DNA of 64,000 nucleotides from contig NC_043003.1 of NCBI RefSeq assembly GCF_006345805.1, positions 44,330,001 to 44,394,000 of the forward strand. The letters are read 5' to 3'. This DNA comes from Octopus sinensis. Taxonomy: Eukaryota. Under the pieces are notes generated by a model, which searched no databases, had not been told where the DNA came from, and saw only the letters and a list, made by a program, of their open reading frames with translations. The position numbers and the translations under genes are program-made. Below, piece after piece: positions 35,698-43,569 of the stretch. Numbering within the stretch: position 1 is the first letter of the stretch; each line of letters begins with the position of its first letter.

Positions 35698-35909
35698 GGT
35701 TGTCAAGCGATGTTGAGGAGACAAACACAGGTATACAAGCATATATGCACACATACATATATACATATATACGACGGGCTTCTTTCAGTTTCCGTCAACA
35801 AAATCCACTCACAAGGCTTTGTTCGGCCCGAGGCTATAGTAGAAGACACTTGCCCAAGGTACCACGCATTGGGACTGAACTCGTAACCATGTGGTTGGTA
35901 AGCAAGCTA
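35698..35909 (-). mobile_element. SINE family B, 5' two-thirds
   Basis: Matches 43800-44040. Confidence 0.85.
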
Positions 35910-36918
35910 AGCTTAAATACCTCATTAAGAGATAATAATATCCAATGAAGTCATTGGTTTATTACCTATTATTTATTTGGAATCTTAGTTTAGTTTAGAA
36001 TAATAAAGTAATTAAATAAACCGAGATTAGTATTTAAGAAAAATAAGAAAATAGAGATAAATCAATTAATAGTTATATTTGTTAATTACAAAAATAGACA
36101 TAATCTCTGACAGCTGTTTCGGTTCAAACTTTAGAAATTAATTAAAATAAATAAATCATTATAAAATTGAATTTCGTCGAAGGTAGAAAAATGATATGTC
36201 ATTACCTTTTTATATTTTTGTGCTTTAAGTGTACGGAGCATACCAGTTAACTGAGTATTATTTTATAGGAAAATATGGTATAAACCTTATAAAGTAGAGA
36301 AAGGCAGTATGTTTAGAAAGTATAAACATAATATAAAATGCATTGGGAAAACATTGCAAGTATAAAAAAGAAAACATATAGCAATAAACTGTATAGTTAA
36401 ACCATATATTTAAGTATCAAATAAATGGATAGGTAAATGAATTCATAAGAATTTAAGCAATATAATATATTCTGGGTAGTCATTAAAATTATAGAAATAT
36501 ATATGTAGCAATTAAAATTTTAATTGACCTTTTAATTATTATATATTCATTATTAGGGGAAAGATATTTATAATAATTTATAAAAATTTAAGTAATACGG
36601 GTGTATATATATGTAAATGAAATAAATATAAAATGAGTAATTATAATAGGTAAACATATATGTATATTTTTGAATGTAAGTATACTATAAATACTATTTA
36701 TAATATACGTAATAATACGACAAAAATGCAATATAAGTTATATAAAAAAAATATATAGAATCAAAATAAACGGCCATGCTAATAAGCACCTATTGAGCGA
36801 ATATATACATATAATTACACGCTGATATGAAATAATAAATGTAATTATCTATGGGTAAACAGATGCTAAAAATTATGTAAAATTATATATAAAGATTTAC
36901 AAGGACATAAATGAATAT

Positions 36919-38845: not shown

Positions 38846-39389
38846 CTCACAAATCAATTCACACCGACCCACATACACACCGAAATGAACATAGCATTCT
38901 GAAATGTACTTTTGAAATAACTTATGATAGAGACACCTCATTGAAAAGAAGAAAAATAAACGGAAGCATGAACATAAAAAAACATGAATATGTCGATATC
39001 GACGTCTATCATTATACAATTGAAATCGCATTTACATTTTTGATTAAATGCTGTATATGTTTAAAAGTAAATGACAACTCAGCCTGTCGATGAAAGTCTG
39101 AAACTAAACACAATTGTGATCGTAAAACATAAATAGGATCTTATTGTCAACAAGCAGGAAATCTTTTCTTTGCAATGTATGAATATACGTCCCAAATAAA
39201 CATAATCGTTCTAGACACAATGATCACATTCGCAAGCTTACATCCACATATATGTTTTACAAGACTGAGTATATTGTCTATTTCAACAGTGTATATGTAT
39301 AACACTCTGGACATGGACATGCACACACAGATATTTTTTCCGAAGTAACTATGATCCAGCATTCATTATTTTGTTTATCTCTCTATCTA

Positions 39390-39432
<43 letters not shown>

Positions 39433-39433
39433 A

Positions 39434-39481
<48 letters not shown>

Positions 39482-39483
<2 letters not shown>

Positions 39484-41303
39484 CGGTAATTCGCGTAAAT
39501 GGACATCTATCGAGACCTTTCGACATTGCACGTTCGGTCCGTCAGGGATGCCCCCTCTCGGCGCTTCTATACGTATTGACTCTTGAGCCACTACTGCGGA
39601 AGCTGGTGACTCTAAGGGGCATCCCGCGAGAATTGGGATGCGGGACGAGCGTGTCTGCATACGCGGACGACGTCACCGTCATAGTGTCTAGCCACGAGCA
39701 CATCGAGCTGGTCGGCGAGACACTGAAAAACTACGAAGCGGTGACAGGAGCGAAAATCAACCGGGAAAAGTCAGTGGGCTTGCGACTAGGCACCTGGAGA
39801 AGCAAGCCCATGCCGTCCACCAGCGCCTCCGTCGTGGGACGCTGGACCGACGGCCCGGTTGAGTTGCTCGGGGTCTGGTTTGGTCCGGACCTCCAAGTGG
39901 AGAAGAACTGGAACGAGATAACGAGTAGGGTGATCACTCTCGCCCGGCAATGGGCCGAGAGGAAACTGTCCCTAAAAGGTCGAGCGGAGGTGGCGAACAC
40001 GTACATCGCGTCCGTCATCTACTACCGCCTGACCGTCGTACCTTGTCCCGACCCTACCATCACCAAACTACAACGCATCCTCTTTCGCTTTTTGTGGAAA
40101 GGATGCGTCCCGATGGTCAGGCGATCCATTTGCTGTCAACACCCGTTAAAAGGAGGGCTGGGCATGCCGTGGTTGATGATGCGCAGACACGCGCTGAGAC
40201 TGCGACATCTCTGGCTCTATGTAGACGACGGTGAACAGGTGTGGTCGCCGTTTGTGAGGCACGCTTTCCCGCAGCTCGTCTCCATGACCGAACTGCAGTC
40301 GTAGATCAAAAAGAGGCCGAGGAAGGGCGAATGGCACCGCGAGTGTCGCGTTGCTCTCAAGCAACTCTGCCGTCCTGGGTCGACCTTAAGTGACTTCAAC
40401 ACAACCAAAGCATTCTATAGGGGTTTAGTGGAGGGGAGGTACGACGACGAGCTCGGGGCGAACCTGGACGTCGACGATGAATACCTGACCCGCCTGTTCA
40501 GGACGACTTTCGGGCCAGGGCCCATGGACAACTTCCAGAGATCCCTGGCCTGGCAGTGCTACCGAGAAGCGCTACCCGTTCGGGATAAGCTCTACAGACA
40601 CGGCTCGAGAAACACGGGGCCGACCTGCCCGAGATGCGGTCAGAGCGACGAAACCGTTCTGCACGCACTCGTTCAGTGTCCAACAATTTCCGACCTGTGG
40701 GCTTATGTCGAACAACTGCTGTCACGTGTGGGACGAGTCGGTTTATCAGCTGAGTCTATCGTCAATATTGTCACGCCTCCTTCCTTCAAACGGGGGAAGA
40801 AACTATTTTCATCATCCTTGTGGCTATGGCGAAAGAATGTATCTGGTGGACGCGCTGAAAGGATTGGAGACAAACACTTTCCTCTCTGGTCAATCTCTCA
40901 TCAACTTCTTCAAGTACCACTTGAAAAGGAAAGTGAGAGAGTAGAGAGGCAAGTTTTGTCTAGCGAATGTTTTAAAAAAAGAAGGGTGAATGTAGGAAGA
41001 ATGGCACGTATGAATGATGAAGCCACCTTGAGCATAGTCCTATGAACCCAGAAATCGAAAACAGAGAGTTGCTTATTTATTGACCGAGGTTACCGTGGTC
41101 TTTTCTGTAGGCTTTTCTTTCCACGGGAAAACCTCACCTGTCATCCCCTTTACACTTCATATTGACATTTCTGTGATAACGATCCCTATTGATCAATTTT
41201 CTTTTCCGCTCCCCCTTTTTTTTAACCCCCCCTTTTTTGTCCTCTTTCTCTCCTTTTACGATCCCTTTTGATCGAAACTCCCCCCTTCCTTTTTTTTTTA
41301 ACC
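39482..41303 (+). mobile_element. Tx1/L1-clade LINE, 5'-truncated, flanked by (CTAT)n on both sides
   Basis: RQGCPLS, YADDVT, RGHL-type thumb region, CPRCGQSDETVLHALVQC zinc knuckle; TAG at 40302-40304 and 3' frameshifts; GC-rich relative to the flanks. Confidence 0.93.
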
Positions 41304-41354
41304 CTATCTATTATCTATCTATCATCTATCTATCTATCTATCTATCTATCTATA

Positions 41355-41385
<31 letters not shown>

Positions 41386-41420
41386 ATTTTTATCTATCTA
41401 TTTATCTGTCTGTATGTCTG

Positions 41421-41467
<47 letters not shown>

Positions 41468-41495
41468 GTCTGATGTCTGTCTGTCTATCTGCCTA

Positions 41496-41532
<37 letters not shown>

Positions 41533-41709
41533 CTATATGTCTCCGTCTGTCTATCTATCTATCTATCTATCTATCTATATATATATATATATATTATATT
41601 ATATATATATATATTATATATATATATATAATATATGTATCTATCTATCTATCTATCTCTCTATCTATCTCTCTATCTTCTATCTATATTTATCTATTCG
41701 TCTGTCTAT

Positions 41710-41780
41710 GTACCGGTGATTCGGTGTTAGAATGCTCGCCTGCCACAAGGGCGACTCATGTTCGATTCCCGGCTGATGCA
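41710..41780 (+). tRNA. tRNA-Gly(GCC) pseudogene
   Basis: 71 nt; anticodon GCC at 41742-41744; T-loop GTTCGATTCC; about 12 differences from my recalled invertebrate tRNA-Gly(GCC) sequence; acceptor and T stems damaged. Confidence 0.85.
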
Positions 41781-41789
41781 TGTAGAAAT

Positions 41790-42696
41790 TCTAAGCATGT
41801 TATAAGAGATTACTGGAGGGGAAGTACGACGATGATCTTGGGCCAACCTGGGCCGCGACGATGAATACCTGACCCGCTGGTTCAAGACGACTTTCGGGAC
41901 GGGACCTATGGACAACTTCCAGAGATCCCTGGCCTGGCAGTGCTACCGAGAAGCTCTACCCGTTCGGGATAAGCTCTACAGACACGGCTCGAGAAACACG
42001 GGGCCGACCTGCCCGAGATGCGGTCAGAGCGACGAAACCGTTCTGCACGCACTCGTTCAGTGTCCAACAATTTCCGACCTGTGCCCTTATGTCGAACAAC
42101 TGCTGTCACGTGTGGGACAAGTCGGTTTATCAGCCGAGTCTATCGTCAATATCGTCACGCCTGCTTCCTTCAAACGGGAAGGAAGAGCTATTTTCATCAT
42201 ACTTGTGGCTATGGCGAAAGAATGTATCTGGTGGACGCGTCTGAAAGGATTAGAGACAAACACTTTCCTCTCTGGTCAATCTCTCATGAACTTCTTTAAG
42301 TATCACTTGAAAGGAAAAGTTAGAGTAGAGAGGCAAGTTTAGTCTAGCGAATGTTTCAAAAAACGATGGGTGAATGTAGCAAGGATGGCACGTATGAATT
42401 CTATGAAGCCGGAAAAATTTAAAACAGAGAGTAACTAACTTGCAAATGAATGTGTTAATATGTGCCATTATTGACAGAGGTTACCGTGGTCTTTTCCGTA
42501 AGCTTGTCTTTGTACCCCCTTCATACTTTACATCATGACATGTCTGTGATACACGATCCCTATTGATCGTTTTTTTACGATCCCTTTTGATCGAAAACCT
42601 GCCCTTTTTTTTTCTCCTCAAAAAGAAAAGGAAAAGCTCTACTTTGTAATTTGTGCTCTCTGTGTTCAGCCCAGTGTGGCTAATAAAGAAACATAC
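41790..42696 (+). mobile_element. Tx1/L1-clade LINE 3' fragment (second copy) with intact 3' end
   Basis: Highly similar to 40405-41290; CCHC knuckle; ends AATAAAGAAACATAC then (CTAT)n. Confidence 0.92.
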
Positions 42697-42718
42697 CTAT
42701 CTATCTATCTATCTATCC

Positions 42719-42789
<71 letters not shown>

Positions 42790-43569
42790 AATCTATCTAT
42801 CTGTCTATCTGTTAGTTAATCTGTCACTGTACATTGCTGCAAGCAAACTAGGACACGTGCAAAAAATTTTCACGTGCATTAAGGCGTCGAAAATTTCAAT
42901 AGGCAAACCTAAAATTAGATTACGCTATGGTAATTAAACAAAAGTGTAACCACAGACAATAATGAGCTACAAACGTCAAAATTATCAAAAACACGTGAGC
43001 TAACTTACCCAAACACACTAAGCCTAGCAAAATAAAGAAATAAGCAAAACAGCAATTATATAGATTAAGCGAAAAACGAAACTAAATTGAAATTGCCATA
43101 GAGTTGATCATGCAACAAATATACAGTTCAATACGACAAATAAAAAAAAACAGAAATAAAGAGACAAAACCAAAATATAAAGACAGAACTCATGGAAATT
43201 GAAAAAGGCGAGTACAAAAAAAAATGTAAACTTAGCACCATATCTTACAATAAATTGAATAAAAGCAGACGCAAAGACATATCCACTAAAATTATTACTG
43301 CAGCTGATTTTACTTAATCAACAAAAATAAGAGAGAACATCTAAAGATCAATAAACAACTTTCAGAAAATATCATTAAACCAGTTCTCATTCGGTATGCA
43401 GCCTTCTCATTTTCATTCCTTACTCTTTGAATAAACCGCATTTTCATTATTTCTACTCGGGTCTATCTTCCTCTTTTGAAATTGACTCCTTTACTATTGG
43501 CGTGAGTCCTCATTATTTTGCTGCTATTTACATAATATATTCCTCTTATAGCTATTCACATTCACCAAC

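What the first reader, a model, noticed from the sequence alone, without database searches (positions are those of the whole stretch)
41710..42696. tRNA-Gly(GCC) fused to a Tx1 3' end inside a GATA repeat: candidate nascent SINE or template-switch chimera
Seen: a complete 71-nt tRNA-Gly-like sequence is followed after only about 10 nt (tgtagaaatt) by sequence aligning to the Tx1 (ctaagcatgttataagagattactggagggg versus caaagcattctataggggtttagtggagggg in copy 1). The LINE part runs ~900 bp to an intact 3' end, and the whole unit is bracketed by CTAT repeats. Known: SINEs consist of a Pol III head plus a LINE-derived 3' tail, and L1-clade RTs make U6/tRNA chimeras by template switching. Inference: one retrotransposition event produced tRNA head + LINE tail. 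If multicopy, this is a long SINE-like family mobilised by Tx1. Alternative: the LINE inserted just 3' of a tRNA gene in a GATA-spaced tRNA array. T-rich runs in the body might stop Pol III early.
Basis: partly seen in the sequence, partly recalled or inferred. Interest (0 to 1): 0.75.

Follow-up and report, generated by a model that had tools for sequence, protein, structure and literature searches.

The report
Pre-tRNA-Gly fused to truncated LINE
A decayed copy of an unprocessed glycine pre-tRNA sits head-to-tail on a 5'-truncated jumping gene (LINE) inside a CTAT microsatellite of an octopus-type genome. It is most likely a one-off by-product of the LINE's reverse transcriptase changing templates, a process already known, and not a new SINE.

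Summary
Window 41710-41780 is a 71-nt tRNA-Gly(GCC) copy, but decayed: 59/71 identical to the host's genes, missed by ARAGORN and Rfam, and no cloverleaf fold. The "linker" is a tRNA-Gly 3' trailer of about 13 nt (41781-41793). It ends where related intact genes start their Pol III T-run terminator. About 905 bp of LINE follow (41791/41794-42696), running to the family's normal 3' end.

The LINE is an L1/Tx1-type element (APE, RT, zf-RVT). Its copies lie in (CTAT)n arrays far more often than chance allows, so the CTAT brackets are its usual target and tail.

The junction occurs once in the 2.7-Gb genome, and the body holds T4-T9 runs. It is not a multicopy or nascent SINE. No other tRNA lies in the 64 kb, and no intact tRNA-Gly gene adjoins a CTAT array, so the "GATA-spaced tRNA array" alternative fails.

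Best reading (about 0.7): one retrotransposition event in which the LINE RT switched from LINE RNA to a 5'-matured, 3'-unprocessed pre-tRNA-Gly, or the two RNAs were ligated first.

Weak point: the tRNA part is about 2.2 times more diverged than the LINE part (P about 0.01).

Read and orthologue checks could not be run. Earlier notes of this scan, not checked here, report similar pre-tRNA chimeras and the same CTAT-targeting LINE elsewhere in this genome.

The parts
39376..39482 (+). (CTAT)n array directly 5' of LINE copy 1; target microsatellite
   Evidence: TRF, period 4, 27 copies
39484..41299 (+). LINE copy 1. It is a 5'-truncated member of the young subfamily, carrying the RT C-terminal half and zf-RVT. 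It has an in-frame TAG at 40302-40304 and lacks the last ~85 bp of the family's 3' end. It is a later, separate insertion into the same microsatellite.
   Evidence: 98.4-98.9% identical over 1,595 bp to 29 other copies. RVT_1 hit. 3' end compared with 27 copies. ML end branch 0.022.
41304..41709 (+). Degenerate CTAT/CTGT/CT/TA microsatellite that runs up to tRNA position 1. It is an old target array, possibly with copy 1's tail added.
   Evidence: TRF 41304-41687, 82% matches; sequence read
41710..41780 (+). Decayed tRNA-Gly(GCC) copy of 71 nt including the discriminator A, with no CCA
   Evidence: 59/71 identical to the canonical host gene (L003:1497-1567). 12 changes, 9 of them transitions and 10 G/C to A/T. 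Not called by ARAGORN or Rfam. No cloverleaf.
41781..41793 (+). tRNA-Gly 3' trailer (TGTAGAAATTCTA). The last 3 nt (CTA) also fit the LINE 2/3, so they are possible microhomology at the junction.
   Evidence: Shares an in-register 9-mer, GAAATTCTA, with the trailer of a tRNA-Gly-derived locus at C4:129745607. P about 0.002 against random genomic 14-mers, with some selection bias. Only these two loci carry it. Intact genes with related trailers begin their T-run at this position.
41791..42342 (+). LINE copy 2, C-terminal remnant of ORF2 with the CCHC zinc knuckle. It has a frameshift near 41840-41850 and the stop at 42340-42342.
   Evidence: Aligns with ORF2 of near-intact copies from position 2419 of the 3,464-nt reference piece, L082:1-3464. 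zf-RVT E 2.4e-07. ORFs in two frames.
42343..42696 (+). LINE copy 2, 3' UTR up to the family's normal 3' end
   Evidence: Matches 40 other copies to the last or second-last base
42697..42810 (+). (CTAT)n tail or target array 3' of the unit
   Evidence: TRF, 28.5 copies, 94% matches. The same repeat follows 45 of 53 family 3' ends.

Best explanation
One retrotransposition event made the whole unit 41710-42696. An older subfamily of an L1/Tx1-type LINE that inserts into (CTAT)n microsatellites began target-primed reverse transcription in a CTAT array. It copied about 905 nt of its own RNA from the 3' end. The cDNA then continued on a nuclear pre-tRNA-Gly(GCC) that still had its 3' trailer but a mature 5' end. 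This happened either because the reverse transcriptase switched templates or because the two RNAs had been ligated beforehand. The cDNA ran to tRNA position 1 and was joined to the upstream part of the array.

Shown: the anatomy, the single-copy status, the target preference of the family and the identity of the trailer. Inferred: the single event and the template switch. The insert never multiplied and is now a dead tRNA pseudogene on a dead LINE fragment. Much later a young copy of the same LINE family (copy 1) landed in the upstream part of the same array.
For: (a) The boundaries are those of an RNA. The tRNA-derived piece starts at tRNA position 1, directly after microsatellite sequence. 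It ends 13 nt into a trailer that matches a tRNA-Gly trailer type. That is the position where intact genes with related trailers (L003, L009) begin their T-run terminator. There is no CCA and no native 5' or 3' gene flank.

(b) The tRNA has the same orientation as the LINE, and the LINE is 5'-truncated but complete at its 3' end.

(c) The unit occupies the place a plain 5'-truncated copy of this family normally occupies. (CTAT)3 lies within 100 nt upstream of 13/24 truncated copies and within 40 nt downstream of 45/53 3' ends, against 40/5000 background windows.

(d) Chance adjacency is very unlikely. Only 40 canonical tRNA-Gly 3' ends exist in 2.7 Gb, none next to CTAT arrays, and the window has no other tRNA.

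(e) The mechanism has precedent. U6/L1 chimeras are full-length, sense and at the 5' end of truncated L1, and 21 human tRNA/L1 chimeras are known (PMC13174262). Template switching has been invoked for Tx1-era SINEU 5' additions (PMC4494074).

(f) A second locus (C4:129745607) joins a 5'-aberrant tRNA-Gly with the same trailer to SINE-like sequence at almost the same trailer position.
Against: The two halves do not look equally old. The ML end branch of the LINE part is 0.079 overall (0.051 in the ORF part next to the tRNA, 0.124 in the UTR). The tRNA part differs from the canonical gene at 12/71 sites. Applying the LINE part's own rates for CpG, other G/C and A/T sites predicts 5.4 changes (P about 0.01).

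Possible reasons, none tested: a variant source gene that no longer exists (no surviving relative shares the private changes); transcription-associated mutagenesis of a promoter-bearing tRNA copy (known for tRNA genes, PMC6130373); RT errors; or chance.

Target-site duplications cannot be read inside a microsatellite. No read-level or orthologue evidence could be obtained.
Confidence: 0.7

Rival explanations
1. Two separate events. A tRNA-Gly gene, or an older tRNA-Gly retrocopy, already lay at this place. Later the LINE inserted 13 nt downstream of it, and microsatellite sequence came to abut its 5' end.
For: The tRNA part is about 2.2 times more diverged than the LINE part, as expected if it is older. 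The family inserts repeatedly into the same arrays: copy 1 here, and tandem copies in L032, L037, L044 and L047.
Against: It needs three coincidences. The microsatellite must end exactly at tRNA position 1. The LINE 5' end must fall exactly where the Pol III transcript would end. The orientation must match. There is no T-run terminator on either side of the LINE and no native gene flank. Intact tRNA-Gly genes are never next to CTAT arrays. A sense-oriented L1-type insertion is not expected to place its 5' end at a top-strand T-run (established L1 endonuclease preference, from general knowledge).
Confidence: 0.15
2. The joint was made at the DNA level. A tRNA-gene fragment or tRNA cDNA was captured as filler during repair of the 5' junction, or two loci recombined.
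For: Not excluded by sequence alone. The possible 1-3 nt microhomology (CTA) at the junction fits end joining as well as template switching.
Against: A captured genomic fragment would not be expected to begin at tRNA position 1 and end at the transcript's 3' end. No donor locus with this trailer and an intact gene exists now.
Confidence: 0.08
3. A nascent or multicopy SINE: a tRNA head with a LINE tail that has been, or is being, amplified by the partner LINE.
For: At birth it had the three formal parts: a tRNA with A and B boxes, the LINE 3' end and a (CTAT)n tail. The partner LINE family is still active, with at least 40 copies about 99% identical.
Against: The junction 32-mer, the 161-nt junction query and the 40-nt stretch with the private variants each occur once in the genome. 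T4, T4, T7, T4 and T9 runs lie at +481 to +895, before the 3' end that the LINE RT would need. Three A-box positions are mutated and the cloverleaf is lost. At 987 bp it is long for a Pol III unit.
Confidence: 0.02
4. Assembly artefact: a false join of a tRNA locus and a LINE copy.
For: No read evidence could be obtained. The region is flanked by long microsatellites, which are hard to assemble.
Against: The joint itself lies in non-repetitive sequence. Both halves carry many private substitutions found nowhere else. A misjoin of real loci would carry those loci's sequences.
Confidence: 0.03

Closest known systems
U6/LINE-1 chimeric retrocopies of mammals (template switch or RtcB ligation before TPRT; PMC13174262, PMC4476161)
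   Same: A Pol III small RNA, complete at both ends and in sense orientation, sits on the 5' end of a 5'-truncated LINE that is complete at its 3' end. The unit is inserted at the LINE's usual kind of target, and each chimera is single-copy.
   Different: The acceptor is a pre-tRNA with a 3' trailer, not U6. The LINE is a microsatellite-targeting L1/Tx1-type element of a mollusc with a (CTAT)n tail instead of poly(A). TSDs cannot be read.
Human tRNA/LINE-1 chimeras (n = 21; PMC13174262)
   Same: tRNA-derived sequence joined to LINE in what is taken to be one retrotransposition event.
   Different: The human cases are mostly half-length tRNAs in antisense orientation, attributed to twin priming. 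This one is full length, sense and carries an unprocessed trailer, so it follows the U6 pattern instead.
Microsatellite-specific Tx1-clade LINEs: Kibi (TC)n, Koshi (TTC)n, crocodilian (TTCC)n/(TTTC)n families (Kojima & Fujiwara 2004, as cited in PMC4494074)
   Same: An APE-type LINE whose copies lie in one kind of microsatellite far above the 20% criterion used in PMC4494074.
   Different: The repeat unit here is CTAT/GATA. I found no paper on it in the held library. Clade membership by RT phylogeny was not tested.
tRNA-derived SINEs with LINE-derived tails (SINE2), and the idea that they arise by template switching (PMC4494074)
   Same: The same formal architecture: tRNA head plus partner-LINE 3' end.
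   Different: Single copy, about 990 bp, with internal Pol III terminators and a decayed promoter. It never became a family.

Membership tests
LINE/small-RNA chimeric retrocopy (U6/L1 type) | Small RNA at the 5' end of a 5'-truncated LINE, in the same orientation, with the LINE 3' end complete | tested here: met
LINE/small-RNA chimeric retrocopy (U6/L1 type) | The small-RNA part has the ends of the RNA, not of a genomic fragment | tested here: met
   It starts at tRNA position 1. It ends at trailer nt 13, where related genes start their T-run. A short 5' leader hidden in the CTGT/CTAT sequence cannot be excluded.
LINE/small-RNA chimeric retrocopy (U6/L1 type) | The whole unit is flanked by target-site duplications at the LINE's target motif | tested here: inconclusive
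   Both flanks are the family's preferred (CTAT)n target, but TSDs cannot be recognised inside a microsatellite.
LINE/small-RNA chimeric retrocopy (U6/L1 type) | Both halves are of the same age | tested here: not met
   12 changes in the tRNA part against 5.4 expected from the LINE part's rates, P about 0.01. The numbers are small and tRNA-specific mutagenesis may explain it.
LINE/small-RNA chimeric retrocopy (U6/L1 type) | Present or absent as one block at orthologous loci | not testable with these tools
   The genome has no relatives in the genome search.
tRNA-derived SINE (SINE2) | Multicopy family sharing the head-body junction | tested here: not met
   The junction is unique.
tRNA-derived SINE (SINE2) | Functional internal Pol III promoter and no terminator before the 3' end | tested here: not met
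   The A-box region is changed at tRNA positions 10, 14 and 18. The B box keeps 10/11. There are five T>=4 runs from +481.
tRNA-derived SINE (SINE2) | 3' tail shared with a partner LINE | tested here: met
Tx1 clade of the L1 group of LINEs | APE endonuclease + RT + C-terminal CCHC (zf-RVT) in ORF2, and closest solved relative is L1 ORF2p | tested here: met
   Pfam on L069:6-3056 gives RVT_1 at 9e-31 and zf-RVT at 1.6e-07. Exo_endo_phos scores 22.5 bits, just under the cutoff, on a cut N-terminus. Human L1 ORF2p scores E 1e-45 against R2 at 1e-20.
Tx1 clade of the L1 group of LINEs | RT phylogeny groups it with Tx1 reference elements rather than L1 proper | not tested
   No reference Tx1 sequences were on hand. 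The only hints are one automatically named 'Transposon TX1' homologue at 32% identity and the report of 13 recently active L1-Tx1 families in Octopus vulgaris (PMC13282606).
Tx1 clade of the L1 group of LINEs | Target-specific insertion (more than 20% of flanks of one sequence type, the criterion of PMC4494074) | tested here: met
   54% of 5' flanks and 85% of 3' flanks against 0.8% background
Functional tRNA-Gly gene | Cloverleaf and detection by tRNA models | tested here: not met

The most novel reading that the evidence does not exclude
This is one of several chimeras in which LINE/SINE reverse transcription in this octopod captured nascent, still unprocessed Pol III pre-tRNAs, full length and in sense orientation. 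Human tRNA/L1 chimeras differ: half tRNAs, antisense. If such captures are frequent here, with an active microsatellite-targeting LINE as partner, they could be the standing source of new tRNA heads behind the very large number of SINE families reported in Octopus. Leads only: the second tRNA-Gly-plus-trailer junction at C4:129745607 and the earlier scan notes s1-307562, s1-108830 and s1-108806, which I did not verify.
Probability: 0.15. Interest if true: 0.6.

Novelty: new member of a known kind. Interest (0 to 1): 0.3.

Why it matters
In itself it is a dead, single-copy by-product and has no function.

Its value is as a clean natural record of what the reverse transcriptase of a mollusc L1/Tx1-type LINE can do. 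The acceptor RNA can be identified as a 5'-matured, 3'-unprocessed pre-tRNA. That places the event in the nucleus, at the stage of La-bound Pol III transcripts (pre-tRNA processing order is from general knowledge).

It shows the raw material of SINE birth (tRNA head plus partner-LINE tail) and why this instance failed: length and internal terminators.

The by-product finding may be of more practical use for annotating cephalopod genomes: an abundant, recently active LINE family that targets CTAT/GATA microsatellites.

Tried and rejected
I did not resend the stretch.
The element is therefore known only over its last ~3.46 kb.
- ARAGORN on 60 loci with LINE copies found no other intact tRNA beside a LINE 5' end. 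With 24 informative junctions this says little.
- A variant source gene or SINE head: no other locus shares 3 or more of the six private changes in the central 40 nt.
- Base composition or CpG decay as the cause of the extra tRNA divergence: all three site classes are about twofold higher than in the LINE part.
- The upstream CTGTC resembles the 5' flank (..CTGTCA) of some tRNA-Gly genes. I rejected it as a leader because CTGT units are common throughout the degenerate array and the match is out of register.
- The first 10 nt of the spacer alone were only weakly similar to known trailers: 3 of 40 genes within 3 mismatches, and P 0.01-0.04 in a simulation against the 17 trailers held. The 13-14-nt comparison was clearer.

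Full report
WHAT IS THERE

The window is G000:C7:44330001-44394000 of a 2.72-Gb animal genome. The nearest named relative of its LINE protein is from the octopod Argonauta hians.

- a long degenerate CTAT/CTGT array (TRF 41304-41687, continuing in degraded form to 41709);
- a 71-nt tRNA-like stretch (41710-41780);
- a short spacer;
- about 905 bp of LINE sequence ending at 42696;
- a clean (CTAT)28 array (42697-42810).

THE tRNA PART

ARAGORN finds no tRNA in the whole window. Rfam finds none at E<=10 in 41500-43000 or at gathering score in 64 kb. A search of the genome with 41700-41860 nevertheless hits many real tRNA-Gly(GCC) genes at 82-85% identity over the tRNA stretch, and ARAGORN calls those genes.

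Position by position, 59 of 71 bases agree with the canonical gene (L003:1497-1567) and the GCC anticodon is kept. Of the 12 changes, 9 are transitions, 10 go from G/C to A/T, and 4 lie in CpG. The copy no longer folds as a cloverleaf, while the real gene does. It is a decayed, full-length tRNA-Gly copy without CCA.

THE SPACER IS A tRNA TRAILER

The 10 nt after the tRNA do not align with the LINE. Together with the next 3 nt (41781-41793, TGTAGAAATTCTA) they share an in-register 9-mer, GAAATTCTA, with the trailer of a tRNA-Gly-derived locus at C4:129745607. Against random genomic 14-mers and the 17 trailers I held, such a run has P about 0.002. That locus was found with a pattern containing the first 10 nt, so only the extra 3 nt are fully independent.

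Only these two loci in the genome carry this trailer. Intact genes with related trailers (L003 TATGAAAGTCTA|TTTTT, L009 TTATGAAATAC|TTTT...) start their Pol III terminator at exactly the position where the window's trailer gives way to LINE sequence.

The tRNA-derived piece therefore runs from tRNA position 1 to the last trailer base before the terminator. That is the extent of a pre-tRNA whose 5' leader has been removed but whose 3' trailer has not. From general knowledge, this is the normal La-bound processing intermediate. The last three bases, CTA, also fit the LINE at 2 of 3 positions, so there may be 1-3 nt of microhomology at the joint.

THE LINE

Near-intact copies carry an open frame of at least 1,016 codons with APE, RVT_1 and zf-RVT (L069:6-3056). 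The closest solved protein is human L1 ORF2p (E 1e-45, against 1e-20 for R2). One automatically named 'Transposon TX1' protein is a 32% homologue. Octopus vulgaris is reported to hold 13 recently active L1-Tx1 families (PMC13282606). I could not run an RT phylogeny, so 'Tx1' stays plausible but unproven.

The family is abundant, with more than 2,000 first-look candidates. It has a young subfamily: at least 40 copies are about 99-100% identical over 811 bp.

Copy 1 of the window (39484-41299) belongs to that subfamily (ML end branch 0.022). It lacks the last ~85 bp of the element.

Copy 2, the one fused to the tRNA, belongs to an older, star-like burst. It corresponds to the last ~1,046 nt of the element, reaches the normal 3' end and contains the zinc-knuckle remnant.

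WHY THE CTAT BRACKETS

All 27 young copies whose 3' ends I read, and most old ones, end ...AATAAAGAAACATAT followed by (CTAT)n. Counted formally:
- 45 of 53 3' ends are followed by (CTAT)3 within 40 nt;
- 13 of 24 5'-truncated copies have it within 100 nt upstream, in the same orientation;
- the background is 40 of 5,000 windows.

Tandem copies occur in 4 of 29 loci. This is a LINE with a (CTAT)n tail that preferentially inserts into CTAT/GATA arrays. It passes the 20% criterion used for target-specific Tx1 families, where (TC)n, (TTC)n and (TTCC)n/(TTTC)n targets are known (PMC4494074). I found no paper on a CTAT/GATA-targeting LINE in the held library.

The brackets are therefore the ordinary target and tail. 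The tRNA-LINE unit sits exactly where a plain truncated copy would.

NOT A SINE, NOT A tRNA ARRAY

The 161-nt junction query, a 32-nt junction pattern with 3 mismatches, and a 40-nt stretch holding six private variants each occur once in the genome. The body holds T4, T4, T7, T4 and T9 runs from +481 to +895. A Pol III transcript from the tRNA promoter would stop long before the 3' end that the LINE RT must recognise.

No other tRNA or Rfam family lies in the window. None of the 40 loci with a canonical tRNA-Gly 3' end has (CTAT)3 within 12 nt upstream or 30 nt downstream.

MECHANISM

The best-supported reading is one TPRT event in a CTAT array whose cDNA passed from LINE RNA to the 3' end region of a pre-tRNA-Gly. 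This is the pattern of mammalian U6/L1 chimeras: small RNA complete, sense, on the 5' end of a truncated L1. Two routes are proposed for those chimeras, template switching and RtcB ligation before reverse transcription (PMC13174262, PMC4476161). I cannot tell the two apart here.

It differs from the 21 human tRNA/L1 chimeras, which are mostly half tRNAs in antisense orientation (PMC13174262).

THE WEAK POINT

The two halves should be equally old. The ML end branch of the LINE part is 0.079 (0.051 for the ORF part next to the tRNA, 0.124 for the UTR). Its private changes amount to 8.2% of CpG sites, 9.7% of other G/C sites and 4.3% of A/T sites. Applied to the tRNA's composition this predicts 5.4 changes, and 12 are seen (P about 0.01).

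So either the tRNA copy is older (two events), or its source was a variant gene now lost, or it mutated faster. tRNA genes are known to suffer strongly elevated transcription-associated mutation (PMC6130373), and a freshly inserted copy with an intact promoter and no selection would feel that. This is an inference, not a test.

I keep the two-event model at about 0.15. It needs the microsatellite to end exactly at tRNA position 1, the LINE to begin exactly at the end of the Pol III transcript, and the terminator and all native flanks to have vanished.

DATING

With the rough calibration quoted for Octopus (Jukes-Cantor distance 0.12 about 33 My; PMC13282606), 0.07-0.08 corresponds to roughly 20 My. 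This is an order-of-magnitude inference only.

WHAT COULD NOT BE DONE

I did not resend it and did not use read laying.
- The genome has no relatives in the genome search.

EARLIER NOTES OF THIS SCAN

These are unverified by me except where stated. Two notes describe the same CTAT-targeting LINE in other windows (s1-105961, s1-116797). My counts on independent copies agree with them. Three notes describe other small-RNA chimeras in this genome: pre-tRNA-Lys on a LINE (s1-307562), pre-tRNA-Ile on a SINE tail (s1-108830) and 5S rRNA on a SINE (s1-108806).

The scan has thus found this kind of thing before on other DNA of this genome. That makes a recurrent process plausible, but it is not evidence for this locus.

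VERDICT

Noticed in passing
L057-L085 (e.g. L069:6-3056); window 39484-41299: The LINE family has a very young subfamily. At least 40 copies are about 99-100% identical over 811 bp, and at least one has an open ORF2 of 1,016 or more codons. This suggests recent or ongoing activity of a CTAT/GATA-targeting L1/Tx1-type LINE.
   Followed up: partly
window 41290-41310 and 40302-40304: Copy 1 lacks the last ~85 bp that all 27 other young copies read at their 3' ends carry. Its T-run passes straight into AACC + CTAT repeats. It also has a private in-frame TAG. This could be an internal deletion or reverse transcription started inside the 3' UTR.
   Followed up: no
L053 / L086 (G000:C4:129745607-129745641, minus strand): A tRNA-Gly copy with an aberrant first ~12 nt carries the same rare trailer (TTATGAAATTCTAT). 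It runs straight into sequence that looks like the 5' start of the common octopus SINE, partly as a snap-back. It may be a second pre-tRNA-Gly chimera from the same lost source gene. The SINE identity rests on my memory and on the fragment in this window.
   Followed up: partly
G000:C7:40.00-40.23 Mb and C5:47.19-47.24 Mb: The 40 loci with a canonical tRNA-Gly(GCC) 3' end are strongly clustered. About 11 lie 4 Mb from this window on the same chromosome-scale contig and about 10 lie on C5. Paralogues share trailers and 5' flanks.
   Followed up: no
L032, L037, L044, L047: Two LINE copies of this family lie in tandem within 3 kb, separated by CTAT repeats. This fits repeated insertion into the tail of an earlier copy.
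   Followed up: partly
window 35740-35915 (minus strand): A fragment of the abundant tRNA-derived octopus SINE, next to (TA)n and (TG)n arrays. It was recognised from memory and not tested.
   Followed up: no
window 42343-42696 versus 41791-42342: In copy 2 the 3' UTR has an end branch of 0.124. That is twice the ORF part (0.051) and twice the median UTR end branch of the other old copies (0.059). The cause may be alignment noise in T-rich tracts or real local hypermutation.
   Followed up: no
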